Origin: Rebecca billardiae RCC1528
Taxonomy: Eukaryota > Protista > Haptophyta
Length of the DNA stretch: 64,000 nucleotides
Assembly: GCA_965240325.2 (NCBI GenBank)
Contig: OZ251225.1
Span: forward strand, 992,001 to 1,056,000
Direction: 5' to 3'
In this document: one piece after another, positions 1-41,220 of the stretch
Position numbering within the stretch: position 1 is the first letter of the stretch
Layout: every line of letters begins with the position of its first letter
Notes under the pieces: model-generated
The model's input: only the letters and a program-made list of their open reading frames with translations
Database searches by the model: none
Told to the model about the DNA's origin: nothing
Made by a program: the position numbers and the translations under genes

Positions 1-2181
1 GCGCCTTCGAGCGGCTCGTGCGCGTCGGGAAGTGCGCCGAAGCGTATCCGGAGCATGCTCCATCGACGCGTCGCACTGCCGGGCCCTCGTATGCGAGCCC
101 ATGCCGACGTCTGAGTGCGCCTCGCTGCGCACGGTACAGCTTGACGGTACACGGCACGATTGGGCCCGCGAGCAGCCTCGTGCGCGCGACCGAGCCAGAG
201 GTGGTCGTCAAGAGTAGCACGAGCGGCGGCACACGAGCGGGGCTGGTCGTTGCCGAATATCTGACGCACCAATCGACCTCGCGCAGACCCGTCTGCTCGT
301 TTGTGCGCGTGTTGGAAAGGATGAGCAGCTGCGTGCAAACGCCGAGCGCACAGATGAGGCGTGGGCGAGCGAAGGGGCGGCGAGGGCCGGCGCGTGCGCG
401 CGCGTAAATTCGAGCCTCCCCATACGCATCGAAACACACCGCGCTCGCTCGTCGAGCTGCGCACGGGTATCGGTGCGCGCGCGCCAACGCGGCGCGCAGT
501 GAACGCGCCCGGCGAATGCACACCTGCTCGCGCGCGCACGCGCACGTGATGGACCGAGGAGGTCGCGCGAGCATGCGCGATGTGTCTGGATGGAGCGTGT
601 AGGAGGTGTAGGCTACGCTCCGCACGCGCTCCGCCACCGTGCACCGCGCTGCCCCTCGTCCACGCGATCGCCGCCGAGCCCAGATTCAAACGCGCGCGAG
701 CCCGCGAGCGCGCCTCCGAGCAGCGCTTGCAGCAATCGTGTCGAAGGCTTGGCGAGAGGCAGATGTGCATGGCAAGTAGCGCCATGGGGGTGCCCATCAC
801 GCACACACACCCGCGCACGCTCGCCGCACCACCTCGTCGTGCCCACGTTCAGCGCGCGGGGCGCACTTTGCGCCTCGAGCAGCTGCCGAGCGGCTCCCGC
901 GCGCGGCGCGCGCAGCGAGTAGAACTCAGCCAATGGTCCGAGGGCGAGCCGGCCGAGCGTCGTGCGTGACGCACATGGACCTGGTGCAACGCCGCGTACC
1001 ACTCGCAGCCACCATCGCGCCCGTACCAGCGAGCTGTGGCCGCCGCCGACACCCCAAAGCAGCCCAGCCGTCAGCGCGCGACAGCCGACGAGCGCGCGAC
1101 GCGCGCGTGCACCACCGTGATGAGCACGGATGAGCGCGCGCGCCCGTGTCGTAGCCCAGGTGGGGTCCCCCGATCGCACGCACCACCGCGCTGCCACGCC
1201 TTCGACCATCTTGTGTCACCACGCGGGCACACGCCGGGCAGGCGGCGGGGGCAGCCCGCTCGGCAAACGGTCAGCGCGCAGCGAGGATGGAGTCCGGCGA
1301 GGGGCGACCGGAGTGTCCGGCGCGACGGAGGTGGTCCACGCCGTGGTCGCCGACGCGTTCCTCACCACCTCCGAGGCCGTGGTGGCCGCACGGGAGAAGG
1401 AATGCTCCCAGTCGCACCCTTTGCAGTGCTCCTTTGCGCGCGCACGCAGCGCCAACGAGCGAAAGCGTTTAGCGGGACCTAGTCCGGGGCTCAAGGGTAC
1501 CATCATCAAAGAATGGAATGCGTGCAAAGGTCCCGCTAAACAAATTTTGTGTCGCCCGTGCCGCGCGCGCGCGAGCACGGCCAATGCGGCTCCTTGCACA
1601 TCTGCTGCAGATCGGCTCGTGCTCGGCGAGCGCGGCGAGGAGGAAGGTGCGCGCTCGCGAGCTGGCGCACCTGGGAGTCCTCGCGGCCTCCGAGCAGAAA
1701 GAGCGCGTCGAGCGCAACGCCGCAGGTCGCACGGTCGCGATCTCGCGAGAGCGGTGGTGCGAGGGCGGGCCTCGCCATCGCGCGTTTCTGCGTCCAAACG
1801 CGGCCTCCGTAAAATCCGGATGGCGGTCAAGGGATTTTGCTGGTGCGCTATCCTCAGAAAAGTTTACACTCATCCTCATCCAGGCGCCCACGCGGGCGCA
1901 CGGGGGCGACAGCCGCGGCTGCCGCTTGCCGGAGCTGCTCGCCGCTAGGTCGGCGGGCGGCGACATCGACTACGACCTCACCCTCATCCAAGTGCTCCGG
2001 AAGGCGCTCGGCCGCGGCGGCATCTGCCGTCGCCGCCGCGTGCCCCAGGCCGAGGCGGTGCTCCATCCCGGCCCCGCTCCCGTACCAGTAGGGGGGCAGT
2101 GCTGCGGGTGGCGCACTGTCTGACCTGGACGGAAGGCGCGGACGCATTCTATGTGTCTGTTGCACTCTGAGCCTGACGCTT

Positions 2182-25624: not shown

Positions 25625-28600
25625 ATGAGCACGACCATGAAGATGGTCGAGCTCAAGCGCGTCTTCTCGGTGCCGAGCGAGCTGAATGGCCCTGGCCCGG
25701 TCATGTTCGCCTGGCACCCCGATGGCAGCTACTTGGCCTGCGCGGGCGCGAGTCGGATCGTGAACATCTCAAACCGACAGGGCAGCCCCATCGCCGAGAT
25801 CCCACTGTCCGGGTGCGTGCGCCCGCTCGGCGCGAGCACGCACGGCGACTGGATCCATGCACACCCTCGCACCCCGCTGCACGCCTCGCGCCCGAGTCAC
25901 CCTCACGCACCCGCTGCGTCGCCGCGCGCGTCCACGCGCCACGCCCGCCGCGCCGCGCCGCTCGGCCGCAGCGCGTGCCTCGCGCTCGACTGGGACAAGG
26001 ACGGCGAGGTGCTGGCGGTGCTGCAGCGCGACACGGGCATCGTGCCGCTGTGGGACGCGAACCAGCACAAGGTGAACAACCTGGACACCAACATGAAGGA
26101 CCTCACGTTCCTCAAGTGGTCGCTCACGGGGCCACAGGTGCGGCCACCGACCTGCGCGCGCGCTCAGAGAGCACGCGCGCGCGCGCGCGCGCACCGGACT
26201 GACCGACCGAGCGACCGACGGCCGGCTTGGCGCGGCGGCCGTGCCCGTCGCACCCGCGCGCCGCCCGCCCGCGCGCGCAGCTCGCCATCGGCAACGTGAA
26301 GGGCAACCTGCTGCTGTACAACAAGCGCACGCTCAAGAAGGTGCCGATCCTCGGCAAGCACGTCAAGCGGATCACGTGCGGCGCGTGGAACGCGGACAAC
26401 AAGCTCGCGCTCGCGTCGGAGGACAAGCAGGTGACGATCAGCAACGGCGACGGCGACACGCTCACGCAGACGATGCTCAAGTCCGAGCCCTCGCAGATGC
26501 GCTTCTCCGCCACGCGCACCGACCGGCTGGACACGAGCCGGGTCGACGGCGGCGAGAAGTCGGTCGTCGCGGCGGTGATGAACAAGAAGACGCTGCTGCT
26601 GTACGACACGGACGACCCGTCCAACCCGATCGAGCTGGCGTTCCAGGCGAAGTACGGCTCGATCTCCACGTACCGCTGGTTCCAGGCCGTGCACCTCCTC
26701 ATCGGCTTCGAGACCGGGTACATGGTGGTCGTCTCGACCACGCCGGACGAGGTGGGCGAGGAGAAGGTCTCGATCAAGGCGCACCAGGGCCGCCTCGTCG
26801 ACCTGACGTTCGCGCCGACGATCAACCGCGTGGCGACGTGCACGGCGCGGGAGATCATGATCTGCGACATCGTCACCAACAACTGGAGCGAGCTCACCCG
26901 CGAGTACGCCAAGATCGACGACGAGGCGGGCGACCTGCAGTCGCTCGGCTGGACGGCGGACGGCACGATGCTCACGGTCACGGCCGAGTCGGGCAACCTG
27001 CACTGCTTCCTCGCGTCGCTGCCGTGCCTCTCGGCGACGAGCGGCGCGCGGTACGCGCACCTCTCCTCGCTGCAGGAGATCTCCGTCCTCGCCGCGCCGC
27101 GCGCGCTCGAGCCGCCCGGCGCCGTGCCGCTGCCGCGCGTCGTCAAGATATCGCTCGAGCCGACGCTGCTCGCGCTCGGCGCCGAGCACGTGGCGATCGG
27201 CATGAACAACACGGTGATCTACTACTCGCTGCGGACGGGCGAGGCGGTGCTCGAGCGCGAGTACCCGGGGAGCGTCGACGCGATCCGGCTCAACGCGCGC
27301 TTCGCCGCCGTGCTCACCGAGGGCGCGGTGCACCTGCACCCGCTGCCGCAGCACGACGGCGCGGAGGGCTCGGGCGGCTCCGGCTCGTTCCCGGACTCCG
27401 AGGTCCGGGACATCACGTCGATGGCGCTGACGCCGGACTTCTTGCTGTTCGCGACGCGGCGCGGGACGGTGCACTTCTTCGCGCTCACCGACTGGGCCTT
27501 CGTCTCGGAGTACCGGCACAAGGAGGCCGTCGTCGGCGTGTTCCCCAACGAGCTCGGCACGCGCGCCGTGTTTGTGGACGCGTCCAACCAGGCGCACGTG
27601 TACAACCCGGTCAAGGAGGAGGCGATCCTCGTGCCCGACCTGGGCGGCAGCTCGATCGTCGCGGTGATGTGGGACGTGATCGAGCGCGGCGTCTTCGTGC
27701 TGTACGACCGCCGCGCCTTCCACGTCTGCGTCTACTCGCAGGGCACGATGGCGGGCGACCGCATCGAGGTGGTCGCGGCGACGCAGGTGAACTCGGTCGC
27801 CAACACGGTGCTGTGCCACTCCGGGCAGGTGATCTTCCAGAACACGACGGGCGCGATGCAGACGCTCACGCTGCCGTCGCACGACCGCGTGCGCACGGCG
27901 GACGGCTCGCCGCCCACCGCCGCCGTCGGGCGCGACGGCCTCACCGCCGCCATCGAGCAGAACCTCAAGCTGGGCCGGTACGCAGAGGCGTGGCAGGTCG
28001 CGCAGCACCTGGAGTCGGCGCACACGCTCGACGCGATCGCCAAGGCGGCGCTGCGCTCGCTGGACATCCCGCTGGCGACACGGATCTACCGGCAGGCGGG
28101 CGACGTGGGGATGGTGATGTCGCTCAACAAGATCGCGCAGCTCGAGGACACCAAGCTGCTCGCCGGCCACGTCGCGCTCATCTTCGGCGAGTACAACTCC
28201 GCGCAGGATCACTTCCTGGCGTCCACGCAGCCGCTCGGCGCGCTCGAGATGCGCAAGAACCTGCTGCACTGGGAGGAGGCGCTGACGCTCGCGCGCACGC
28301 TGGCGCCGGCGGAGGTGCCGCTCATCTCGAAGGAGCTCGCCGCGCAGCTCGAGGTGCGCGGCGACCACCAGGCCGCGCTCGAGATGTACCAGCGCGGGCA
28401 GACGGGAGAGCCTGACAGCGCGTCCGACCGGCAGTGCGCCGCGGGCATCGCGCGCATGACGCTGCGCCTGGGCGACGTGCAGCGGGGCGTGCAGATGGCG
28501 CAGCAGTCGAACGACCAACAGCTCTGCCGCGACTGCGCGACGATCCTCGAGGGCCTCAAGCAGTGGGCCGACGCGGCGATGCTCTTCGAGCGGGTGCGCG

Positions 28601-29131
28601 CGCACGGCGCCCCGCGCGAGCGCGCGCGCCGCGCCCGCGCGCGCGGCGGCGCGCGGCGCGCCCGCGCGCCGCTCGCCGAGCTCACGGCCACTGCCGCGCG
28701 TGCCTCCGCGGCTCGCAGGGTGGCCTTCCGGACCGGGCGGCGGCGATCTACATCAAGCACAAGAACTGGGCGGCCGCCGGCGCGCTGATGAATCAGATCA
28801 CCTCGCCCAAGCTGCAGCTCGAGTTTGCGCGCGCCAAGGAGTCGGACGGAAAGTTCGAGGAAGCGGCGCGCGCGTACGAAGCGGCCAAGGACATGGACGC
28901 CGTCGTGCGGCTGCTGCTCGAGAAGTGCGCGCGGCGCGGCGCGGGGCGCGCGGGAGGGCGGCGTGGCGGCATGCCTCGCGTGCGCGCGCACGCCTCCCGC
29001 CATCTTTCCCCCCGCCCCGACGCTGCCGCGCGCTCCGTGCCGTGCCGCGCGCGCGCGCTGCCGAGTGCCGCACTCGTTGACCTCGGCGCCGCGCGCGCGC
29101 GCGCCTTCCGCGCGCACGCTGCTGCTGCTGC

Positions 29132-31118: not shown

Positions 31119-32153
31119 TCAGCTGATGCTCCAAACCCCGACGAGGTACATGCACCGGATGAGCAGCAGCTCCTTAGCCATCTGCAGCATCCCCGTCACA
31201 CGCATCTTCGAGCCGGGGATCTCGGTCCAGTTGACGGGCTCCTCGCGCACCTCGATGCCTAGGCGCGAGGCCATGAAGAAAAGCTCCACGTCGAACGCCC
31301 ACCTCCGCACGTGCAGATTGCTGAACAGCCGCTTGCCCGCCTCGCGGCCGAACAGCTTGAAGCCGCACTGCGTGTCCTTGATCGTGCCGCCGATCGCGAG
31401 CGCGACCAAGAAGTGGAAGATCTGCGTGAGTACGCCGCGGTAGAAGCTGCGCTTCACGCTCTGCAGGTGGGCCCGCGAGCCCGCGACGAGTAGCATCGCC
31501 TCGGCGGGCGGCTCGCGCCCGAGAAAGTGGCGCTCGAGCTGCTCAAAGTCTGCAAAGCGGGTCGCGCCGTCGGCGTCGACCATTAGCATCAGCCGGCCGC
31601 GCGCGGCGAGCATGCCCTGCGCATCGCGACGGCCGCGGGGGTACGCGGGACGCGCGCCAGGCGGGAGAGTGCGTGAGAGCACGGCGCGCTCGCTTGGGGG
31701 CGCCGACCCAGCCGGCGCCCAACCACTGCCCCCAAAAGCCCAGTCTGGCGCGGGCCAGTGCGGGCGCCTGCAGGGGCGACGCACCTCGCGCACGGCAACA
31801 CCCTTGCCGCAGTTGGTGTGCAAACGCAGCACGCGAACGCGCTCCTGTGTGAAGTCCTGGGAGAAGCGTAGTCCGACGTCGCTCGTGCGGTCGGCGCTGC
31901 CGTCGTCAACCACGATAATCTCCCACGAGAACGTCGGGTCCGCCTCAGCGCGCCTTTGCAGAAAGTAGGTCGCCTCGCGGAGCATGTTGCCGAGGCGTTT
32001 TTCCTCGTTGAACGCGGGGACCACGACGGAGAGCGAGCACGACGCCGGCTCGATCGGAGCGCGGGCGTTCGCCGCGGCGTGGTCCCCATTGTGCAGCGCC
32101 TGGTTTGGCATCAGCAAGGTCGCATGCTGGTCGTACCGGGTCGGCGGCGCCAT
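31119..32153 (-). CDS. ALG5: Dolichyl-phosphate beta-glucosyltransferase (GT2); intron 31617-31784
   Basis: LSVVVPAFNEEKRL, EIIVVDDGS, N.GKG.AV, MVDADGAT, IKDTQCGFKLF, RWAFDVEL, VNWTEIPGSK. Confidence 0.92.
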   Translation of the reverse strand: MAPPTRYDQHATLLMPNQALHNGDHAAANARAPIEPASCSLSVVVPAFNEEKRLGNMLREATYFLQRRAEADPTFSWEIIVVDDGSADRTSDVGLRFSQDFTQERVRVLRLHTNCGKGVAVREVRRPCRRPHWPAPDWAFGGSGWAPAGSAPPSERAVLSRTLPPGARPAYPRGRRDAQGMLAARGRLMLMVDADGATRFADFEQLERHFLGREPPAEAMLLVAGSRAHLQSVKRSFYRGVLTQIFHFLVALAIGGTIKDTQCGFKLFGREAGKRLFSNLHVRRWAFDVELFFMASRLGIEVREEPVNWTEIPGSKMRVTGMLQMAKELLLIRCMYLVGVWSIS

Positions 32154-32219: not shown

Positions 32220-33548
32220 ATGGCGACCGACGTCGCCGCGGCCGGTGCGCCGGTGGCGGAAGACAAGGAGCCGGAGACCAAGCGCGCTCGCCGGGAGGAG
32301 GGCGCGCCCGAGGGCCGAGGGGTCGTCGACCTTCCCGAGGGCCGAGGGGCAGACGCGCCCTTCAAGCGCGTGCCGAAGCGCAAGGTGGCCATCCTCCTCG
32401 CGTACAACGGCGCGCGCTACCAGGGCATCCAACGCAACGCTGGCGCGTTCACGGTGGAGGACGAGCTCGCCCCTGCGCTCCTGACGGCCCACGCCATCTC
32501 GCGGCAGAATTCGAACGACCTCACCAAGCTGTGGTGGACGCGCGCTGGTCGCACCGACAAGGGCGTGCACGCGCTCGCCAACGTGATTGGCTTCATGTGC
32601 CACCTGGGGGACGACGAGGCGCCGGCCGCGGTGGCGGAGCGGGTCAACGCCGCGCTCCCGCCCCACATCCGCGTGCTCGGGGCGAGGCGCGTAACGAAGG
32701 GCTTCGACGCGCGCTGGCTGTGCACCGAGCGCTCGTACGAGTACCACATGCCGCTGGCCGCGCTGCGCGCACCGGGCAGCAAGGCGGACGCGGCCGGCCT
32801 GAGCGCAGACGAGCTGGAGACGGTCAAAGCGACGCTTCGCGCGTTCCTGGGCTCGCACACGTTCCACAACTACACGACGGGGCTCAAGGTGGGCGCGCCG
32901 CAGGCGTGGCGCTACATCACCAGCGCGCAGCTCACCGAGCCGTACACCTCGGCCGGCGGGGAGCCGTTCGTGTGCCTCAAGCTGCGCGGCAAGTCCTTCC
33001 TGCTGCACCAGATCCGGAAGATGGTCGCGGTGCTGGTCGCGCGCGCGCGCGGACGGCTCGACGCGGAGCTGTTCAAGCGCACGCTCGGCCCTGACCTGGT
33101 CTCGCTGCCGATGGCCCCCGCGGCCGGCCTGCTCATGCACGGCTGCCACTACGAGCAGTACGACAACAAGTGGGGAGGGCAGGACGGGCGCGAGGCGCTG
33201 GCCCTCACGCCGGCGGAGGATGCCGCCCGCCAGGCGTTCTTCCGCGAGCACCTGCTCGGCGCGGTCGCGTCTGCGCCGGTCACGGTCGCCTTCTTCGCGT
33301 GGCTCGAGCGGATCGACCGCTTCGTCTTCTCCGTCACTCAACCACGCGCCAAGGCTCCGGCCGCGGCCGCCGCGCCTTCGGCCAACGCCGACGGTGCCGC
33401 CGCCGGCGATGATGACGACGTGACCGATGTCGTTGCGGCCGGACCATCTCATCCACCGGCGACGGCGACAAGCACTGACGACGATGCGCTCGCGCAAGGT
33501 GGCGCCTCAGAGCAGCCGTGCAACGAGGATGCTGCCGTGGACGAGTAG
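32220..33548 (+). CDS. PUS1: tRNA pseudouridine synthase, TruA/Pus1 family
   Basis: KRKVAILLAYNG..YQGIQ, RAGRTDKGVHA (catalytic Asp), GSHTFHNYT, GKSFLLHQIRKMV. Confidence 0.93.
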   Translation: MATDVAAAGAPVAEDKEPETKRARREEGAPEGRGVVDLPEGRGADAPFKRVPKRKVAILLAYNGARYQGIQRNAGAFTVEDELAPALLTAHAISRQNSNDLTKLWWTRAGRTDKGVHALANVIGFMCHLGDDEAPAAVAERVNAALPPHIRVLGARRVTKGFDARWLCTERSYEYHMPLAALRAPGSKADAAGLSADELETVKATLRAFLGSHTFHNYTTGLKVGAPQAWRYITSAQLTEPYTSAGGEPFVCLKLRGKSFLLHQIRKMVAVLVARARGRLDAELFKRTLGPDLVSLPMAPAAGLLMHGCHYEQYDNKWGGQDGREALALTPAEDAARQAFFREHLLGAVASAPVTVAFFAWLERIDRFVFSVTQPRAKAPAAAAAPSANADGAAAGDDDDVTDVVAAGPSHPPATATSTDDDALAQGGASEQPCNEDAAVDE

Positions 33549-34012
33549 CTGCTGAGTCCGTCGCTGACAGCACTAAGCCGCCCGGAGCCCACGGCCGTAC
33601 GGCGGTCCCACGGACCCAGTCGCGCTTGCTGCCGCTTGCTGCAGACCCGCAGCTGCGAGTGCCGAGTGCGGTCTGCGCAGCAACCGAGCAAGACTTCCAG
33701 AGACTGGAGAGGTGATGTGATGGAGGGAAGCTAGGTGCTCAGATCAGCTCCGCTGCGCGCGTAGCGAGCAGGGCCCCAAGATGCCTTCGAATGAACAGCG
33801 CTGTAGCTTAGTGTGTAGACTCTACTGTCGTACAGTACAGTGCTGTACTACTATACCTGTACTGTACTGGTACAATGCACTACGACAGTATCAGCAGTAC
33901 ACTACTGCTCGGGCGCGGGCACCAGTCCTTGACTCCCTTGTCCGGGCAGTGAAGCGCGCGCTCCAGCGCGCGGGACGGCGCGCGCTCCCCTCTTGCGCCC
34001 GCGGTGGCTGCG

Positions 34013-37000
34013 ATGGCCTCCGACGAGATCCGCACGTGGCTCGACACCGTCGACGAGGGCTATGCCGACCTCTTCGGCCACGTATTCGCCGCCATGTACG
34101 CCCGCCGCCTCGACGACCTCGCCACTTTTGCCTCAGCCGACGACTTCATCGACGCCTGCTTGACCGCGGGTCTGCCCGTGGCCGCAGCCGTGCCGCGCGC
34201 GCGACTCCGCGCGGCGTGGTCCGTGCTGCACAAGGGCGAGACCACAAGCTTAGTGGCCCGCGCGGCTCCGGCATCCGGACCGGAGCCAGAAGCCCACGCG
34301 GCTCCCCCATCCGCACCACCCATGGACATTGTCATCGACAGCGGCGACAGCAGTGCGCCGTCGACCGCGCCGATGGACATGCCCACGAGCGCCGACACGC
34401 CGCGCCTCAAGCTGACCGTGTACGGGTCCTACTTCGACGTCGAGCCGGGCGCGTCCTTCCCCGTGGAGCTGGGTGCCAACTCGACGCTCTTGGACCTCAA
34501 GTTGGCGTGCGCAGAGCATCTCGGCGTCGCCGCCACCTTCGTGCCCGACGCGCCGCTTCCGGGTTCTGACGGGGCGGGTGCGGAGCTGCCGGTCGTGATT
34601 CACTGCCCGAGCAGGTACGGTGGCGACGGGCGGGAGATGTTCGTCCTCGCGCCGCGCACGCTCGATCTCGCTGCGCTGAAGGCGCGTATCGCGCACGCGG
34701 CGGGCGCATGCATCGCTCACGTTGGCTTTGAGCTCGTCGGTGGCCCCGGCGTCGGCACGGAGGGCATGGCATCTGCGGAGGAGGGCCGCCGCGCTGATTG
34801 CACGCGCCCACGCCTCTTGGTGGACCACATGATCACGTGGCAGCCGGATCCGCGCAGCGGCCTGGTCCGCCTCGGGCCACCTGGCGAGGCGCGCACTGGG
34901 CGACTCACGGCGCATGGCGCCGCGCCAGGCCTGTGCGGCGTGCACGCGCTGTCTCAGTGGCAGCTGTGCTTGTGCTTCGGCGGCGGCGTTGTGCTTCGCG
35001 CAACAGTGCCGAACCCGCTCGTTCCGGGTGGCGCGACACACGTCACCCTGGCCGACGCTGCGCGTGCAGCGCTCGGCGACACCTCCGCGCCTGCGGCGTG
35101 CGCCGACGGCGCAGCAGCGGCCGTGGCCACGCCGCCTCCCATCTGCCTGGCCGGTGCGCGCAGCGGCGAGGGCGCGGCGGCCCTGCTGGACGTGCTCGCG
35201 CTCGGCGACTCGGCGCGCCTGGACGTGGAGTGGACGGCCGCCGTGCCCGATGGCGTCGTGGATGTGCTAGTCAAGACGTACACGGGCGGCGCTGCCACCG
35301 TCCGCGCGGCGCTCAGCGACCGCGCAGCGGAGCTGCTGGAGCGCGCGGCCTCCGAGCTCGCCACAGCTGAGCAGCGGCACGGCCGTGTGGCCGAGCTGAG
35401 CGTGTGCGGGTCCGGCCACAGGGCGGTCCACGTGGAGGGCAGCGCGCCAGAGGCGGGGCGCGCGCCGCCGACGGTGTGGTCGCTCGGCTTTGGCCGTGCC
35501 GAGCAGCCCACGGCCTTCCTCCACTTCCGCGCGCCCGCCGCGGCCGCCGCGGCGGGGGCGGCCGCTGCCGCACGCGCCGCCGCCCCCGCTGCTGCCGAGG
35601 CCGCGACAGCGGGCGAGGATGCGGGCGGCCGCGTCGGAGCCGACGCCAACGGCGAGCACGACGAGATTGGCGCGGACGAGGACGCAGCCGGCCGCGCGCG
35701 TGCGCCGCGCGCGCGTCGCGTGACCGTCGACGTCGCCCTCGCCAGCCACCCTCTCCTCTCGACAGCCGCCACGGACCAGCTGCCGCTCTCGGCGTGGGGC
35801 ATCTGCGATGGCGACAGCGTGCACGCGCTCGCGCGCTGGACGCGGACGGCGTGCGGCGAGGGCGACGTCCCGCGCACGGGTGCGCTGCTCGCGGGCAGGC
35901 AGGGCCAATTCGCCGACGGCGACGCGTGGTGGTCGGCCGTCGGCGTGCCGCAGCAGTCGGCGAGCGCTCGCGCCGGCGTGCTCGCCTCCCTGCTCGTGCT
36001 GGCGGACTCGCTGCGCGGCGGGGCGCGCGGCGGCGGCGGGCGCGGTGGCGGAGCCGCGCCGCGCGGGCCCTCGCTCGCGCGTGTGCTGCACGTGCTGCGC
36101 GTGTGGCTGCGCTCGGACCATCCAGCGGTCGCGGCGCTTCGAGAGCTCGCGCTCGGCCACGCCATCGCTCCGAGCGCGCAGGCGTGGCTCGGCTGCGCGG
36201 TGCTGCGCATCGCGCGCCGGCTGGCGCCGGGCGCTCCCCCGCCCCCCGCCTCGCTGGGCGAGCACGTGCGCTCGTCGTGCGCGCAGCTGCTCATCCAGTC
36301 CGAGGCCGAGTTGGGCTGGGGCGCGCGCGACGAGCTCGGCCAGTGGCGCGAGCTGCGCCTGGAGACGGGCGCGGCCGCCCCCGCAGCCGCTGATGACGCC
36401 GACGGCGGCGGCGCTGACGATGGCGAGGGCGAGGGCCTGGCGGGCGTCGACCTGCGCGCGCTCGCACTCGCCGCACCTGGCCGAGACGAGATTCGCATCT
36501 GGGCGCCCTCCTCCGCGGCGGCGTGGGCGGCGGCGCTCAACGCGCGCACGCTGTGCGCGCCGGGTGAGGGCGAGCTCGTGGCTCTGAGTAGCGCGGCGCA
36601 CGCGCGCGCGGCCGCCGCGCAGCCGAGCGCGGCGCGGTGCATGCGCATCATCCCGTCCGCGCTGCTCCCGCACGCGCCGCGCCCGTCGCTCTGCCGCGAC
36701 GAGACGGGCCGCGCGGCCGCGTACGTCGGCACGTGGACCTCCGGAGTGGGCGCGTCGGGCGACGAGCTCGTGTCCCTCTTCCTGCCTCTCGAGGGCAAAG
36801 AGCGTCAGTCTGGCGTGAAGGCGCTGCAGGCCAAGCTGGTCGCGCTCGGGCTGGAGTCGGAGCAGGCCAGCGCGGCCGAGCTCGAGTCGGAGATGGCGGG
36901 CACGCCCGACGAGGCGACGGTGCTCGTGCTCGACGTGAGCGCGTCGATGGCGGGCTCGGCGTCGTTCGGCGGGCACGACGAGCAGGAGGAGCAGCGCCGG

Positions 37001-37176
37001 GAGGAGGAGGCCAGCCGGGCGGCGTGGCGGCATGGGCGTGTGGAGCCGCACGAGTGGCGGTGGGACATGCGGCCCAGCCGCCGCGCGCCGGGCGACCGTG
37101 ACGCTCGCAACTCGCGCAGTAGTGCCGACGAGGACGACGAAGAATCGGAGAGCGATGGCGACGGCGAGTGCGGGCA

Positions 37177-37207
<31 letters not shown>

Positions 37208-40200
37208 TGCCTGTACAATGGCGATGACTACGACGACGCGGCCGCGGTCGCGTGCCTGCGCGCCGTCCCGGGCTACTCGCACGCCCTCAAGCTGGCCAGG
37301 TCGCACTCCCCTGAGGCCGTGCTGCGCGAGCTGTGCCACGTCGAGAGCCCCTTGAAGCCGTACAACTCGGAGCTGTACGCCGCCGCGCGCGACCACTTTG
37401 TGCTGCTCAAGCTCACGCTGGCCGGGGACTCGGTGCTGGCGCCCGATGGCCGCAGCGCCTCACGCGGCAGCCGCAGCGCAGCGGCCGCGCCGCCGCGCGG
37501 CGGCGCAGCCGCAGGCAGCGCCGAGGCGGCCGTCGAGGAGGACGACGAGGGCGACGACGACGTGCCGGAGCCGTTCCGCTGCCCAATCACGTGGACGCTG
37601 CTCGACGACCCGGTCGTGGCCCCCGACGGCAACACCTACTCTCGGGACGCGCTGGGCCGGTGGCTGGCGCACAGCGATCGCTCGCCGCTCACTGGGGCGC
37701 CCATGAACACGCGGCTGCCGCTCACGCCCAACTTCAACCTGCGCTCACAGATCCACGCGTGGCTGGATGGGAGCGGCGCCGGCACGCGCGGCGCGCTCCG
37801 CGGGACGGCGGGCGCGCCGGCCGCCGCGCGTGTGGTCTCGTTCGAGGTTGCAGTACTCGCAGCGCCGTCCGATCGGCCTCGCGCCGCACGCGGCGGCGGC
37901 GCCGCCGAGCGCGCCGCGGCCGTGCGAGTGACCGTGCCGCGCAGCGCGCCGCTCTTTGCCATCGCGGCCGCGGTCGCGCGCGCCACGGACGGCGCAGTGT
38001 GGCCGACGCACGCGGCCGCGCCCAACGGCGCGTGGGCCGACCTTGGCACTGGAGCGCGCGCCGCCGACGCCGCGCCAGTGTCCGTGCGCCAGCTGCACTC
38101 GCTCTGCCCACCGGCTGCGGCTGCGGCCGCGGCTGGCCCGGCGTCGGAGGACTCCGTCGGGGCCGACGGCGGGCCGCCGCGCCGCCTGCTGGTGCAGATG
38201 CGCGCCCCCGTCGGCCGCCGCGTGCGCGTCCGTGACCCTCACAACCAGTCCGCGTTCGCGCGGTGGAGCGACGCGCCTGTCGTCTTTGACGAGCGCGTGG
38301 ACGGCAGTGAGACGGTGGGGGGGCTGCTCGTGCTGCTCTGGGAGCGCCTCGGCATCCGGCCGGGCGGGCGCATGCTGTGGTACGACGTGGTGGAGCAGGG
38401 CGACGACAGGCGCGTTGGGCAGCCCGCGACCCTCACGCACGCCCGGATCCCCGCGCACGTGACCGAGTTGGTGCTGCACTACCCGCCGGCCCCGACCCCG
38501 ACGCGCCGAGGCCCCGAGCCCCTCTCGCGGCTGGCGGCCGCGCAGGCCGTGCTGCACGCCTTCTGCAACCGCGTGCAGGCGTACCGCGCGCCGCACGAGC
38601 TCGGCCTCGTGCTCGTGGGCACGGAGGCGCGCGAGGTGTGCGCGCTCACGCCCGTGCTCTCGCGCTTCCGGGCCGAGCTCGACGGCGCGCACGCGAAGGG
38701 CAACACCGCCCTCCGCGACGGCCTGGCGCTCGCCGCGCAGATGCTGCGAGTGCGCGAGGCGCGCCACCGCGCGAGCGCGGCGGCGGCCGGCGGCGGCGAC
38801 GCGCCGCCGCTCGCGCTGCGCGTGCTGTGCGTGAGTGACGGCGAGGACACGTGCTCGTCCGCCGCCAACTCGACGCCCGCCGTCGAGGCTGCGCTCGGCC
38901 CCGCCGGCGGCACGCGCGCGAGGATCGTCGTGGACTGCGTCGCGGTGGGGCGTGCCGACCACGAGCCGCTGTGCGCCCTCGCCAAGCGCTCGGGCGGGCT
39001 GGCCTTTTGGCCGCAGCAGCTGCGCACCGCGCTGCAGCTGTGCGAGCTCGACCCGGTCATCTCGTGCCTGCAGCGCCCGCCGCCTGCGCCCTTCCGTGGG
39101 CCGGGCAGCCCCGACTTCGACGCCATCGACCGCGTGCCGGGTCGGCCCGTGCCAGAGCTGGGGCGCACCGTGAGGCCGCTGTCGGACGCGCTCGCCGCGC
39201 TTGACGCCGCCGAGCCCAGCGCGGGCGGCGGCGGCGCAGGCAGCGCGTCGCGCGCCGTGCTCCGCGAGCTGCGCGAGCTGCACCGCGCGCCGCACCCGCA
39301 CATCGACGTGTTCCCGTCCGACGACGTGCGCTTCTGGCGCATCGTCATCGCCGGCCCCGAGGGCACGCCGTACGAGCGAGGTACCTGGGCCGGCTTTGTG
39401 CGACTCCCGGCCGAGTACCCGGCCGATCCTCCCGAGGTGCGGCTGGTCACGCCGATCAGGCACTGCAACATCAACGCGCACGGTCGCGTGTGCCACTCGA
39501 TCCTCGACCGCAACTGGACGCCGGCGACGCGGATGCGCACTGTGCTCGACTGCGTGTACAGTGCGCGCGCGCGCCCGCGGCCCCGCGCGTGGCGGCGCCG
39601 GTGCGCGAGCGCACGCGGCGGCGTGTGCACAGCGTTTCGCGCGCACCTCCGATGATGCCCTTGGCGCGGCGCGGCGGCGGCGCGTGCGCAGGCCTGCTGC
39701 TCACGCCGGACACGGCCGACCCTCTCGACTCACACCTGAGCCTCAGCTTCTACGGCGCCGACGGCGGGTACGAGGCGGCCATCATCGAGCACACGCGCAC
39801 GCACGCCTCGGTGAGCCGCGCCGAGTGGGGAGAGGCGCTGCGCGCGAGCAGCCTGACGGCGCAGGAGCGCCTCGCCGCCTGCAGGGGCCACCTGGCGAGC
39901 ATGCGCGAGGCGCGGCTCTCTGGCAGCCTCGCGCAGGCCATCCACGCGGCGCAGCTCGGCGCGGCCGCCGTCTCGCAGTGGCCAGAGCCTCTCGCGAGCG
40001 TCGATGACGTGCAGATCGCGCTGGAGTCGACGCGCTGCCGCTTGCACCTCGTGGAGCTTCGCACCGAGGGCGCGCCACACATGCCAGAGCCCGACGCGCG
40101 CGCCGCGCGCGCGCACTCCACGAGCTCGCTCTCGGCGGCGCGGAAGACTCTCCAGCAGCTCCTCCACACCACGAATACGCCGAGCGATGCCCGCCAGCGG

Positions 40201-40503
40201 CGCGACCACCGGCGCTTTGTGGCGCCGCGAGCGCTGCAGGCAGACATCTACTACGCACTCGCCACGGTCGAGAAGCTCGAGGCACGTCGGGGACGTCGGG
40301 TTGCCTGGCTCCGGGAAGCGCTCGGCGCGGCGTTCGACGGCGGCGTCGCGGCGCGCGTGACCGCCATCGAAGCCGAGCTCACCGACGTGATCGCCGAGCA
40401 TGTCGACCGCACGGGCTCTGCAGCTGGTAGCGAGGAGCCACCGGGTGGACAGGGCGGTGGCAGGAGCGGGCGCCGCAGGGGCGGGCGGCGCCAGCGGCGC
40501 TGA
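34013..40503 (+). CDS. Giant ubiquitin-system fusion protein: SAM-like, Ubl-like, split vWA with inserted U-box, UBC (E2), helical tail; intron 39561-39691
   Basis: VLVLDVSASM (MIDAS DxSxS, about 36920); U-box PEPFRCPITWTLLDDPVVAPDGNTYSR...SPLTG (about 37565-37765); vWA remainder GNTALRDGL and VSDGED; E2 GPEGTPYERG...YPADPP...HCNINAHGRVCHSIL..NW. Confidence 0.9.
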
Positions 40504-40504
40504 G

Positions 40505-40680
40505 TACGGTCATTACATCAGCAGTGTCCAGTACCACAGGAAGCGCCAGCACACCCGCATGGGGACCTCCAAGCTGTTCCTGATGCCCGGCACCGAGAAC
40601 CCAGCCGACATCATGACGAAGCCAATCATCAGGCTGATTCCAGCGTCCCTTCAGCTGCGTCTCTTGCGATCCAGCGCCGA
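40505..40680 (+). pseudogene. Copia-type RNase H C-terminal relic
   Basis: H.ISSVQYH..R...G...L..MPGTENPADIMTKP matches the copia RNase H end (compare HIEIRYHRIR...DNVADVLTK in the element at 2.8 kb). Confidence 0.7.
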
Positions 40681-41220
40681 TCCTCGGCATGTGATCGTAC
40701 TTCCATCACGACGAGTCGTACAGTATGCACGTCATGATGCTTCAAGGTAATCGGTCGCCGAACGTCGGACGCACATTGGCAAGTCACGGCTGATCATCAG
40801 CACCGTCTCTTCTGACTGAATGACGGAGCCACGTTTCGACGGCGGCACGACCTGTGAGTGACCTGACCGCTGACGCGCTCAGGCCGGCCGGCTCGTCATC
40901 CGGTCCACTCGCACCCGATCCAGTCTTCCGTTCTCGGACGCCACCGTTAGCAGCAGCACGCGCGCACATCAGTCATCATCAATCACACTCGTCTGTCAGC
41001 GACCCGGATAGTATTCCTAAGTAGTCGTCTCAGTACCGATTCCACGGACTATCCGGGCCGTGACACTGATCGTCACGGTGGCTCGGTCGACCCGGTTACT
41101 ATACGCGGTTGATACGTCTCTGGACTTACTTTATTCGTATACCGCCCGTTGCGTCGATCAGATTAAGTCGTATACCGTCGAGAGTACAAGCCTATCTACG
41201 ACTATCCGGCGGGTCGACCA

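What the first reader, a model, noticed from the sequence alone, without database searches (positions are those of the whole stretch)
34013..40503. Self-contained E2-E3 ubiquitination machine: U-box inserted inside a split vWA domain and fused to an E2
Seen: one protein of about 2100 aa with a SAM-like N-terminus and Ubl-like segments. The first vWA strand (DVSAS) is separated from the rest of the vWA (T and DG MIDAS elements) by about 530 aa containing an acidic tract, a U-box and Ubl-like segments. An E2 follows with the catalytic Cys retained (HCN instead of HPN), then a helical tail. Known: E2 and U-box E3 are normally separate proteins, and vWA-UBC fusions are poorly characterised. Inference: a cis-acting ligase with a metal-dependent substrate sensor, possibly for quality control or antiviral defence. 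The 5.5-kb first exon is also unusual here.
Basis: partly seen in the sequence, partly recalled or inferred. Interest (0 to 1): 0.75.

Follow-up and report, generated by a model that had tools for sequence, protein, structure and literature searches.

The report
Ubiquitin E2 fused to U-box inside vWA
This alga has a real 2,119-residue gene that joins a ubiquitin-carrying enzyme (E2), its usual helper (a U-box E3) and a metal-binding vWA domain in one protein. It is one member of a large, unstudied family found across eukaryotes, not a one-off.

Summary
A two-exon gene (34013-39560, 39692-40503) encodes 2,119 aa with a U-box (Pfam 2.8e-15), a UBC/E2 domain (3.8e-25; HCN, catalytic Cys1827) and a vWA domain. 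The vWA first strand and DxSxS motif (aa 966-979) lie 524 aa before the rest of the domain (aa 1503-1693).

An AlphaFold model rebuilds one vWA fold from both pieces (Z 23 to TFIIH p44; aligned range spans both). All five MIDAS residues are invariant or nearly so in 101 relatives.

The architecture is not unique. A profile search found 713 cluster representatives at E<=1e-30, from stramenopiles, alveolates, ciliates, ascomycetes, hemichordates and teleosts.
- One clade has an unbroken vWA with the U-box after the E2.
- The other, holding this gene, has Ubl domains and usually a U-box inserted after the DxSxS motif.

A U-box or RING sits beside the E2 in several different positions, which supports a cis E2-E3 enzyme. 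The roles proposed for the MIDAS site, quality control and antiviral defence are untested. The SAM-like N-terminus and the helical tail are unconfirmed. No RNA run was listed and I found no paper on the family.

The scan had already met this family in the same genome, as a VWA-calmodulin-E2 paralogue (s1-371927).

The parts
34013..39560 (+). Exon 1 (aa 1-1849 plus the first base of codon 1850)
   Evidence: ORF and translation; GC3 periodicity in this frame; the upstream + strand pseudouridine-synthase ORF ends by 33548.
39561..39691 (+). Intron, 131 nt, GT..AG, phase 1, inside the E2 domain
   Evidence: Sequence; the spliced CDS is in frame; alignments to P0001 and P0002 run unbroken across the junction.
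39692..40503 (+). Exon 2 (aa 1850-2119 and the stop codon)
   Evidence: GC3 support weakens after about 40300, so the last ~200 nt are less certain.
34013..34237 (+). SAM-like N-terminus (aa 1-75), unconfirmed
   Evidence: No Pfam hit; Atlas feature scores 0.82-0.83 to SAM clusters, a lead only; five helices at pLDDT 52-77 in a poor model.
36602..36892 (+). Conserved alpha/beta module before the vWA first strand (aa 864-960)
   Evidence: Sub-profile matched in 101 sequences including the window protein; pLDDT 74-97 over most of it.
36908..36949 (+). vWA strand beta1 and MIDAS D974-x-S976-x-S978 (aa 966-979)
   Evidence: D and the second S are in 101 of 101 rows, the first S in 100 of 101; strand at pLDDT about 96; included in the vWA structural alignments, model range from 100-105.
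37118..37237 (+). Acidic tract (aa 1036-1075), predicted disordered
   Evidence: Sequence; pLDDT below 50 over model residues 145-206.
37562..37768 (+). U-box (aa 1184-1252)
   Evidence: Pfam PF04564 2.8e-15, profile 1-69 of 73; closest solved sequence is plant PUB12 U-box, 7.2e-14; pLDDT about 95.
37844..38041 (+). Ubl-a, degenerate ubiquitin-like segment (aa 1278-1343)
   Evidence: The family profile matches the C-terminal half of ubiquitin here; relatives have PF00240 at this place; pLDDT in the window protein is only 43-77.
38183..38479 (+). Ubl-b, conserved beta-grasp-like module (aa 1391-1489), with near-invariant Asp1464 at a hairpin tip
   Evidence: jackhmmer hits in 40 relatives at domain E<=1e-5; the profile matches the N-terminal half of ubiquitin; pLDDT 86-95; Asp in 73 of 75 rows with a residue at that column.
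38519..39091 (+). Rest of the vWA domain (aa 1503-1693), with MIDAS Thr1565 and Asp1609
   Evidence: Pfam VWA_2 25 bits; T, D and G invariant in 101 rows; pLDDT above 90; Z 23.0, rmsd 2.1 A to TFIIH p44 vWA 4wfq.
39248..39828 (+). UBC/E2 domain (aa 1746-1895, interrupted by the intron); H1817-C1818-N1819; catalytic Cys1827 at 39491-39493
   Evidence: Pfam PF00179 3.8e-25; closest solved sequences are Ubc13/UBE2N, 3e-22; Cys in 150 of 152 sequences.
39829..40500 (+). C-terminal tail (aa 1896-2119), lineage-specific
   Evidence: No Pfam hit and no similarity to 151 family members; P0001 and P0002 end just after the E2.

Best explanation
The locus is an intact two-exon gene for a 2,119-aa member of a pan-eukaryotic, uncharacterised vWA-E2 family. 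It belongs to the subfamily in which about 520 aa are inserted into the vWA loop directly after the MIDAS DxSxS motif. The insert holds an acidic linker, a helical segment, a U-box and two ubiquitin-like domains.

**Shown here**
- The domains and their order.
- A complete MIDAS site.
- A canonical E2 catalytic Cys with an H-x-N motif.
- A U-box of the PUB/CHIP type.
- Re-assembly of the two vWA pieces into one fold in a model.

**Inferred**
- E1 charges the E2 domain with ubiquitin.
- The U-box on the same chain, or on a partner chain of a dimer, activates that E2~Ub, so the protein is an E2/E3 hybrid.
- The lineage-specific N-terminal 860 aa and the tail choose place or substrate.
- The vWA MIDAS site binds a carboxylate of a constant partner: ubiquitin, a Ubl, or the protein's own Asp1464 or acidic tract. 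Because the insert leaves the domain at the MIDAS face and the last vWA helix leads to the E2, it could couple that binding to the U-box and E2.
For: - **Gene model:**
- **Domains:**
- **Family size and range:** 713 representatives at E<=1e-30, all of the top 150 below 1e-85. Named members come from Chromera, Vitrella, Nemacystus, Amoebophrya, Biecheleria, Paramecium, Blepharisma, ascomycetes, Saccoglossus and teleosts.
- **Two architectures.** The gap between the DxSxS strand and vWA helix 1 is bimodal. It is 2-20 aa in 25 representatives, with the U-box after the E2 in 17. It is 248-681 aa in 72 (4 more have 67-106 aa), with the U-box inside the insert in 60.
- **Pfam agrees.** VWA covers positions 2-172 of 174 in an unbroken form (P0030) but starts at about position 17-19 in split forms.
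- **MIDAS conservation:** D, S, T and D are in 101 of 101 rows, the first Ser in 100 of 101.
- **Model:** pLDDT 74, pTM 0.62, beta1 at about 96. The vWA alignments span model residues 100 to 826, with 183 of 192 residues of 4wfq aligned, Z 23.0.
- **Tree:** two clades at 99% local support; the window protein sits in the split clade.
- **Recurrent E2-E3 pairing:** U-box in the insert, U-box after the E2, RING after the E2, or RING-H2 near the N-terminus.
- **E2:** catalytic Cys in 150 of 152 sequences.
Against: - No transcript evidence: no RNA run was listed. In-frame introns hidden in the low-complexity stretches cannot be excluded.
- No biochemical data exist for any family member that I could find.
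- The loop-4 hydrophobic residue that many E2s use to contact RING or U-box domains (Met64 in Ubc13, from my own knowledge) aligns with Ala here. Cis binding is therefore not guaranteed.
- I could not read inter-domain contacts from the model, so U-box-to-E2 proximity is untested.
- About a fifth of split-clade representatives lack a detectable U-box, so the U-box is not essential to the core.
Confidence: 0.6

Rival explanations
1. The two catalytic modules do not work on each other. The U-box recruits a separate free E2 and the built-in E2 works with another E3 or alone. The protein then carries out two successive steps, such as priming and chain extension in the manner of an E4, or acts only in trans within an oligomer.
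For: The E2 loop-4 position that usually contacts a U-box is Ala. About 500 aa and a whole vWA domain separate the U-box from the E2. Some clade members lack the U-box altogether.
Against: A RING or U-box has been kept beside this E2 in several independent positions across the family. That is easiest to explain by direct cooperation. The helix-1 Arg and the T-P-A loop-7 motif of the E3-binding face are retained.
Confidence: 0.2
2. The vWA MIDAS site is not a substrate sensor but an internal latch. It is occupied by a carboxylate of the protein itself, either the near-invariant Asp1464 at the hairpin tip of the inserted Ubl-b or the acidic tract. This holds the U-box/Ubl module in a fixed, possibly auto-inhibited, position, much as the Rea1/Midasin MIDAS domain binds an acidic residue of the Ubl domains of Rsa4 and Ytm1 (my own knowledge).
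For: Asp1464 is Asp in 73 of 75 rows with a residue at that column, and the column exists only in split forms. The insert leaves the vWA exactly at the MIDAS loop. pTM 0.62, with about a quarter of residues disordered, suggests the ordered modules pack together. MIDAS is invariant while the presumed targeting regions vary freely.
Against: Unbroken-vWA relatives have the same invariant MIDAS site without Ubl-b, so the site must have a ligand that does not depend on the insert. The distance from Asp1464 to the MIDAS site in the model could not be measured with these tools.
Confidence: 0.25
3. The gene model is partly an artefact. The N-terminal ~860 aa, the tail, or some low-complexity stretches are not part of the mature protein, through unrecognised introns, a separate upstream gene, or a 3' end altered by a nearby repeat.
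For: Stop-poor 75% GC DNA gives long chance ORFs: many 600-700-aa ORFs overlap the gene in other frames. The N-terminus and tail match nothing. GC3 periodicity is weak in four windows and after about 40300. No RNA run was listed.
Against: GC3 is highest in the ORF frame in 33 of 37 windows from 34013 on. The upstream + strand gene ends by 33548, and an AT-richer spacer precedes ATG 34013. Relatives also carry 500-1,500 aa of poorly conserved sequence before the conserved core. The conserved core, aa 864-1895, does not depend on this question.
Confidence: 0.15

Closest known systems
Uncharacterised vWA-E2 proteins in public databases, e.g. Chromera velia Cvel_6690 (UniRef A0A0G4HFP5, 'UBC core domain-containing protein', 2,062 aa) and Nemacystus decipiens g11818.t1
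   Same: Same order of modules: conserved pre-module, DxSxS strand, insert with a U-box (and a Ubl sub-profile match in g11818.t1), rest of the vWA, then an E2 (HCN in g11818.t1). The tree places them in the same clade.
   Different: Only 36-38% identity in the core. The N-terminal 860 aa and the 224-aa tail of the window protein have no counterpart.
Sister clade with an unbroken vWA: vWA-E2-U-box proteins of teleosts, hemichordates and ciliates (e.g. Coilia grayii, Blepharisma stoltei representatives)
   Same: Homologous vWA with the same MIDAS site, homologous E2 (HCN in 16 of 17), and a U-box in the same polypeptide.
   Different: The vWA is continuous (Pfam VWA 2-172 of 174 in P0030) and the U-box follows the E2. 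There are no Ubl domains at the MIDAS loop.
Mb_UBOXa of Monosiga brevicollis and relatives in Naegleria, Trimastix and Spironucleus (Marin 2010, PMC3087547)
   Same: The only published description I found of an ancient eukaryotic U-box plus VWA protein class.
   Different: The paper mentions no E2 domain. I could not fetch those sequences, so whether they are the same family is untested.
E2/E3 hybrid enzymes UBE2O and BIRC6 (my own knowledge)
   Same: Large proteins with a built-in UBC domain that ubiquitinate substrates without a separate E3.
   Different: They have no U-box or RING beside the E2 and no vWA. There is no homology outside the UBC fold.
Plant RGLG1/2: MIDAS-bearing vWA plus RING E3s that build Lys63 chains (PMC7155146; Yin et al. 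2007, cited there). That Ubc13 is their partner E2 is my own knowledge.
   Same: A vWA with a working MIDAS site combined with a RING-class E3 module. The E2 domain here is closest to Ubc13 among solved sequences.
   Different: In RGLG the E2 is a separate protein, the vWA is unbroken and copine-like, and the E3 module is a C-terminal RING. RGLG vWA was not among the 50 best structural matches.
TFIIH p44/Ssl1 and proteasome Rpn10 vWA domains
   Same: Best structural matches: Z 23.0 (4wfq) and about 20 (Rpn10). Both are intracellular vWA domains joined to ubiquitin-related modules, RING-like fingers or UIMs (my own knowledge).
   Different: They have no E2, no insertion after beta1, and only 17-19% identity. 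From my own knowledge, they also lack a complete MIDAS site.

Membership tests
UBC/E2 superfamily (PF00179) | Sequence match to the UBC core above the curated cut-off | tested here: met
   88.6 bits against a 27-bit cut-off, E 3.8e-25, on exon 1 alone. Ubc13/UBE2N chains score 3e-22.
UBC/E2 superfamily (PF00179) | Catalytic Cys about 10 residues after an H-P-N motif | tested here: met
   Cys1827 is present and conserved in 150 of 152 sequences. The motif is H-C-N: His and Asn are kept and Pro is replaced. Across the family the middle residue is Cys in 86 and Pro in 40.
UBC/E2 superfamily (PF00179) | Complete fold including the C-terminal helices | tested here: met
   Exon 2 supplies the L-L-L-T-P-D...D-P-L-D segment, which aligns with P0001 and P0002 through aa 1888-1899.
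U-box (PF04564) | Match above the curated cut-off without the zinc-ligand pattern of a RING | tested here: met
   56.7 bits against a 21.4-bit cut-off, profile 1-69 of 73. Only one Cys lies in the segment. Plant PUB12 U-box scores 7.2e-14.
vWA domain (PF00092 / PF13519) | Sequence match above the curated cut-off | tested here: inconclusive
   VWA_2 scores 25.0 bits against a 27-bit cut-off, because the first strand is 524 aa away. Unbroken relatives pass; P0030 scores 46.9 bits on PF00092.
vWA domain (PF00092 / PF13519) | Rossmann-like vWA fold that includes strand beta1 | tested here: met
   In the model, 183 of 192 residues of 4wfq align at rmsd 2.1 A, Z 23.0, over model range 100..826. Rpn10 residues 1-190 align over 101..822. 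This is a predicted structure, not a solved one.
vWA domain (PF00092 / PF13519) | MIDAS motif DxSxS...T...D | tested here: met
   D974, S976, S978, T1565 and D1609 are present. They are invariant in 101 rows, except S976 at 100 of 101. Metal binding itself was not tested.
vWA-E2 family, split-vWA clade (unnamed) | Insert of more than 240 aa between the DxSxS motif and vWA helix 1, and tree placement with other split forms | tested here: met
   The insert is 524 aa. The clade of 76 rows has 99% local support, from FastTree only.
Ubiquitin-like domain (PF00240) in the insert | Sequence or fold match to ubiquitin | tested here: inconclusive
   The window segment alone has no Pfam hit. The family profile matches ubiquitin, about 2e-8 for single chains, and relatives have PF00240 there. 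The model shows a confident beta/alpha unit at aa 1391-1489, but no separate fold search was run on it.
SAM domain | Five-helix SAM fold or a sequence match | tested here: inconclusive
   No Pfam hit. Atlas feature scores are 0.82-0.83, below the 0.9 level. The single-sequence model has pLDDT 38 overall.
E2/E3 hybrid enzymes (functional class) | Substrate or chain ubiquitination with E1, ubiquitin and ATP only | not testable with these tools
   Needs a biochemical assay.

The most novel reading that the evidence does not exclude
The conserved cassette (vWA with Ubl and U-box at its MIDAS loop, then a Ubc13-like E2) is a self-sufficient, metal-gated chain-building machine.
- At rest, the MIDAS ion is ligated by the near-invariant Asp1464 of the inserted Ubl.
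- Binding of a carboxylate from ubiquitin or a target displaces it.
- The movement passes through the MIDAS loop to the U-box and through the last vWA helix to the E2, switching on cis E2~Ub discharge.
- The vWA may also position the acceptor ubiquitin, as UEV proteins do for Ubc13.
Probability: 0.12. Interest if true: 0.8.

Novelty: new variant of a known kind. Interest (0 to 1): 0.55.

Why it matters
E2 and RING or U-box E3 enzymes are almost always separate proteins. The known E2/E3 hybrids, UBE2O and BIRC6, have no RING-class module.

Here a natural E2 plus U-box fusion is built around a metal-binding vWA domain. It is conserved from algae, alveolates and fungi to hemichordates and fish, yet I found no study of it.

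The two clades offer a natural experiment on how the position of an E3 module relative to its E2 matters: U-box after the E2, or U-box and Ubl domains threaded into the MIDAS loop. The family is a compact, directly testable system for cis activation of an E2 and for what an intracellular MIDAS site does in ubiquitination.

The window gene itself adds one divergent haptophyte member, not a new principle.

Tried and rejected
- **RNA evidence.** The look-up of sequencing runs listed no run.
- **N-terminal 863 aa and the tail.**
  - Pfam at E<=10 gave nothing.
  - jackhmmer against 151 family members gave nothing.
  - A single-sequence AlphaFold run of aa 1-500 gave pLDDT 38, so I did not search folds with it.
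  - The Atlas feature search gave only sub-threshold SAM leads.
- **First word search.** It was swamped by low-complexity words and returned only two relatives. The exhaustive profile search was needed to see the family.
- **Literature.** Seven searches on vWA, U-box, UBC and E2 combinations found no paper on this architecture. The PARP-family papers that hold those words concern other proteins.
- **'Unique fusion' reading.** Rejected.
- **Defence-island reading.** Rejected because the neighbours are housekeeping genes.
- **Copia fragment after the stop codon.** The 82-codon ORF at 40502-40747 recalled the end of a copia polyprotein to me. It has no Pfam hit and no similarity elsewhere in the window, so I leave it as an unverified impression.
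- **U-box-to-E2 contact.** Could not be assessed because the tools return no coordinates or inter-domain error estimates.
Full report
**1. What is in the sequence**

The + strand holds an ORF from 34004 to 39655, with its first ATG at 34013. A second ORF in another frame runs to a stop at 40503. The E2 domain breaks off at V-L-D-C-V-Y and resumes at L-L-L-T-P-D.

A GT..AG intron at 39561-39691 (131 nt, phase 1) joins the two pieces. The spliced CDS is 6,360 nt and encodes 2,119 aa with a single terminal stop. BLASTP alignments of the spliced protein to two relatives run without a break through aa 1888 and 1899, so homology validates the junction.

Long ORFs alone mean little in 75% GC DNA, and many 600-700-aa ORFs overlap this one in other frames. 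I therefore checked codon-position GC.
- The third position is the richest in the ORF frame in 33 of 37 150-nt windows of exon 1.
- The preferred position shifts exactly as the splice predicts in exon 2.
- Support becomes ambiguous after about 40300.

The next + strand gene upstream, a pseudouridine synthase, ends by 33548. An AT-richer spacer precedes the ATG. No RNA run was listed for this stretch, so there is no transcript evidence.

**2. Domains**

Pfam on exon 1 gives three hits:

| Domain | Residues | Score |
|---|---|---|
| U-box | aa 1184-1252 | E 2.8e-15, profile 1-69 of 73 |
| UQ_con | aa 1750-1846 | E 3.8e-25 |
| VWA_2 | aa 1505-1582 | 25 bits (cut-off 27), profile 19-93 only |

The missing first vWA strand, with the D-x-S-x-S motif, is at aa 966-979, which is 524 aa upstream. 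An acidic tract occupies aa 1036-1075.

The E2 has H1817-C1818-N1819 and the catalytic Cys1827. Among solved proteins it is closest to Ubc13/UBE2N (3e-22), with UBE2A, UBE2D and UBE2E close behind. The U-box is closest to plant PUB12 (7.2e-14), then LubX, UBE4B and CHIP.

**3. The split vWA is real**

Four lines of evidence agree.
- **Conservation.** In an alignment of the window segment with 100 relatives, the invariant columns are D974, S978, T1565, D1609, G1610 and D1641, and S976 is in 100 of 101 rows. Together these are the full MIDAS set, spread over both pieces.
- **Bimodal spacing.** With sub-profiles for each module, the distance between the DxSxS strand and vWA helix 1 is 2-20 aa in 25 representatives and 248-681 aa in 72, with only four in between.
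- **Pfam coverage.** In unbroken relatives, VWA_2 runs from profile position 1, and the VWA model covers positions 2-172 of 174 in P0030. In split forms the match starts at about position 17-19.
- **Predicted structure.** An AlphaFold model of aa 864-1700 with that alignment has mean pLDDT 74.2 and pTM 0.62. The strand at aa 967-974 scores about 96 and the distal vWA above 90.
  - Structural alignment to solved vWA domains spans model residues 100 to 826.
  - 183 of 192 residues of TFIIH p44 (4wfq) align at rmsd 2.1 A, Z 23.0.
  - Rpn10 residues 1-190 align over 101-822.
  - ESM Atlas matches give the same range.

This is a predicted structure, so the co-folding is strongly indicated rather than proven.

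**4. What fills the insert**

The model shows, in order:
- a disordered acidic stretch;
- a helical segment (aa 1075-1137);
- the U-box, at pLDDT about 95;
- a poorly predicted unit (aa 1278-1343);
- a confident beta/alpha unit (aa 1391-1489).

A profile of the region before vWA helix 1 from 35 family members matches ubiquitin in the PDB. It aligns to the C-terminal half of one ubiquitin followed by the N-terminal half of the next, at about 2e-8 for single ubiquitin chains. The region therefore holds two tandem ubiquitin-like domains.

Split-clade members without a U-box carry a clear PF00240 domain at the same place, for example P0013 at 4.7e-22. The window's own Ubl segments give no Pfam hit.

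One residue stands out. Asp1464, at a hairpin tip of the second Ubl, is Asp in 73 of the 75 rows that have a residue at that column.

**5. The family**

The first word search returned only two relatives with the same Pfam set. They are P0001, a Nemacystus decipiens protein, and P0002, an intronless 1,876-aa ORF on a 14-kb contig.

The exhaustive profile search then found 713 cluster representatives at E<=1e-30, with all of the top 150 below 1e-85. Named members come from many lineages:
- Chromera velia (Cvel_6690), Vitrella, Amoebophrya and Biecheleria;
- Paramecium and Blepharisma;
- Ectocarpus and Nemacystus;
- several ascomycetes;
- Saccoglossus, Glandiceps and many teleosts.

All are annotated as uncharacterised, 'UBC core domain-containing protein', or similar.

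A FastTree tree of the vWA-to-E2 region (101 rows) has two clades, each at 99% local support.
- One clade has 25 rows: unbroken vWA, with the U-box after the E2 in 17.
- The other has 76 rows: split vWA, with the U-box inside the insert in 60. The window protein belongs here, without a well-supported nearest neighbour.

The tree is unrooted and made by the quick method, so I do not say which form is older.

It calls the organism a haptophyte and the family widespread but unstudied. My searches agree on the family. I did not check the organism.

**6. Catalytic features across the family**

The catalytic Cys is present in 150 of 152 sequences. His and Asn of the H-x-N motif are conserved at 90% or more. 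The middle residue varies: Cys in 86, Pro in 40, and Val, Ala, Ser, Thr, Ile or Met in the rest. HCN is therefore the commonest state of the family, not a peculiarity of this gene.

In the alignment to Ubc13, the helix-1 Arg and the loop-7 T-P-A are kept. The position of Ubc13 Met64 is Ala.

**7. How it most likely works**

*Shown:* the parts listed above.

*Inferred:* the E2 domain is charged by E1, and the U-box in the same chain, or in a partner chain, activates E2~Ub. The strongest argument is comparative. This E2 lineage keeps a RING-class module in the same polypeptide in several unrelated positions:
- in the vWA insert;
- directly after the E2;
- as a C3HC4 RING after the E2;
- as a RING-H2 near the N-terminus.

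The N-terminal regions differ freely between members. They include ubiquitin, SP-RING-like, Par3-N-like, WWE, RabGAP and SAP modules, or nothing recognisable as in this gene. The vWA-E2 core and its MIDAS site, by contrast, are invariant.

From this I infer that the variable ends choose place or substrate, and that the MIDAS site binds a constant partner. Candidates are ubiquitin or a Ubl, or in split forms the protein's own Asp1464 or acidic tract.

The insert leaves the vWA at the MIDAS face, and the last vWA helix leads to the E2. Occupancy of the metal site could therefore be passed on to both catalytic modules. This coupling is a hypothesis.

**8. Rivals**
- The U-box and the E2 each work with outside partners.
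- The MIDAS site is an internal latch.
- The ends of the gene model are wrong.

These are set out in the rival explanations, with the tests that would decide them. A pseudo-enzyme reading is unlikely given the conserved Cys, H-x-N and MIDAS residues.

**9. Comparison with what is known**

By function, it resembles the E2/E3 hybrids UBE2O and BIRC6. It also resembles the plant RGLG ligases, which combine a MIDAS vWA with a RING and form Lys63 chains (PMC7155146 and its reference 1). That RGLG ligases use Ubc13 as their partner E2 is my own knowledge. It shares only the individual domain folds with all of these.

The nearest published description I found is Marin's Mb_UBOXa. That is a U-box plus VWA protein of Monosiga with relatives in Naegleria, Trimastix and Spironucleus, and no E2 is mentioned. 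A Chlamydomonas survey lists VWA among the domains found in U-box proteins, without detail. No paper in the searchable library describes the vWA plus U-box plus E2 combination or the split vWA.

**10. Verdict**

The gene is a divergent member of a large family that is visible in databases but unstudied. The interest lies in the family and its two architectures rather than in this locus alone.

Noticed in passing
window 40502-40747 (+): Directly after the stop codon, an 82-codon ORF in another frame contains a T-E-N-P-A-D-I-M-T-K-P-I stretch that reminded me of the C-terminal end of Ty1/copia polyproteins. It has no Pfam hit and no similarity elsewhere in the window, so this is an unverified impression. 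If real, a transposon remnant abuts the 3' end of the gene.
   Followed up: partly
window 33800-33900: The spacer before ATG 34013 is AT-richer than its surroundings and full of short gtac/tgtact-type repeats. It may be a promoter or UTR feature, or a microsatellite.
   Followed up: no
window 26227-28788 (+), about 31790-32030 (-), about 32840-33150 (+): The neighbours are housekeeping genes: WDR19/IFT144 beta-propellers (9e-84 and 1e-69) in a 2.56-kb uninterrupted ORF, a GT2 glycosyltransferase exon on the minus strand, and a pseudouridine synthase exon on the plus strand. Long exons are therefore not rare here.
   Followed up: partly
family-wide (E2 motif; window aa 1818, nt 39464-39466): The middle residue of the E2 H-P-N motif is Cys in 86 and Pro in 40 of 152 sequences. 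In the unbroken-vWA clade with a C-terminal U-box it is Cys in 16 of 17. A second Cys nine residues before the catalytic Cys might matter for redox control or catalysis. This was not tested.
   Followed up: partly
P0001 (Nemacystus decipiens g11818.t1) aa 128-289: The closest named relative carries an N-terminal uracil-DNA glycosylase domain (5.9e-17). It is either a real fusion or a merged gene model.
   Followed up: no
P0013, P0066 (split-clade relatives): After the E2, one relative has a WWE domain (1.1e-17). Another has a C3HC4 RING (6.4e-09) followed by a RabGAP-TBC domain (1.3e-14). The family swaps accessory modules freely around a constant vWA-E2 core.
   Followed up: partly
window aa 1464 (nt 38402-38404): Asp at the hairpin tip of the second inserted Ubl (G-D-G in most relatives) is kept in 73 of 75 rows with a residue at that column. 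It is a candidate internal ligand for the MIDAS metal.
   Followed up: partly
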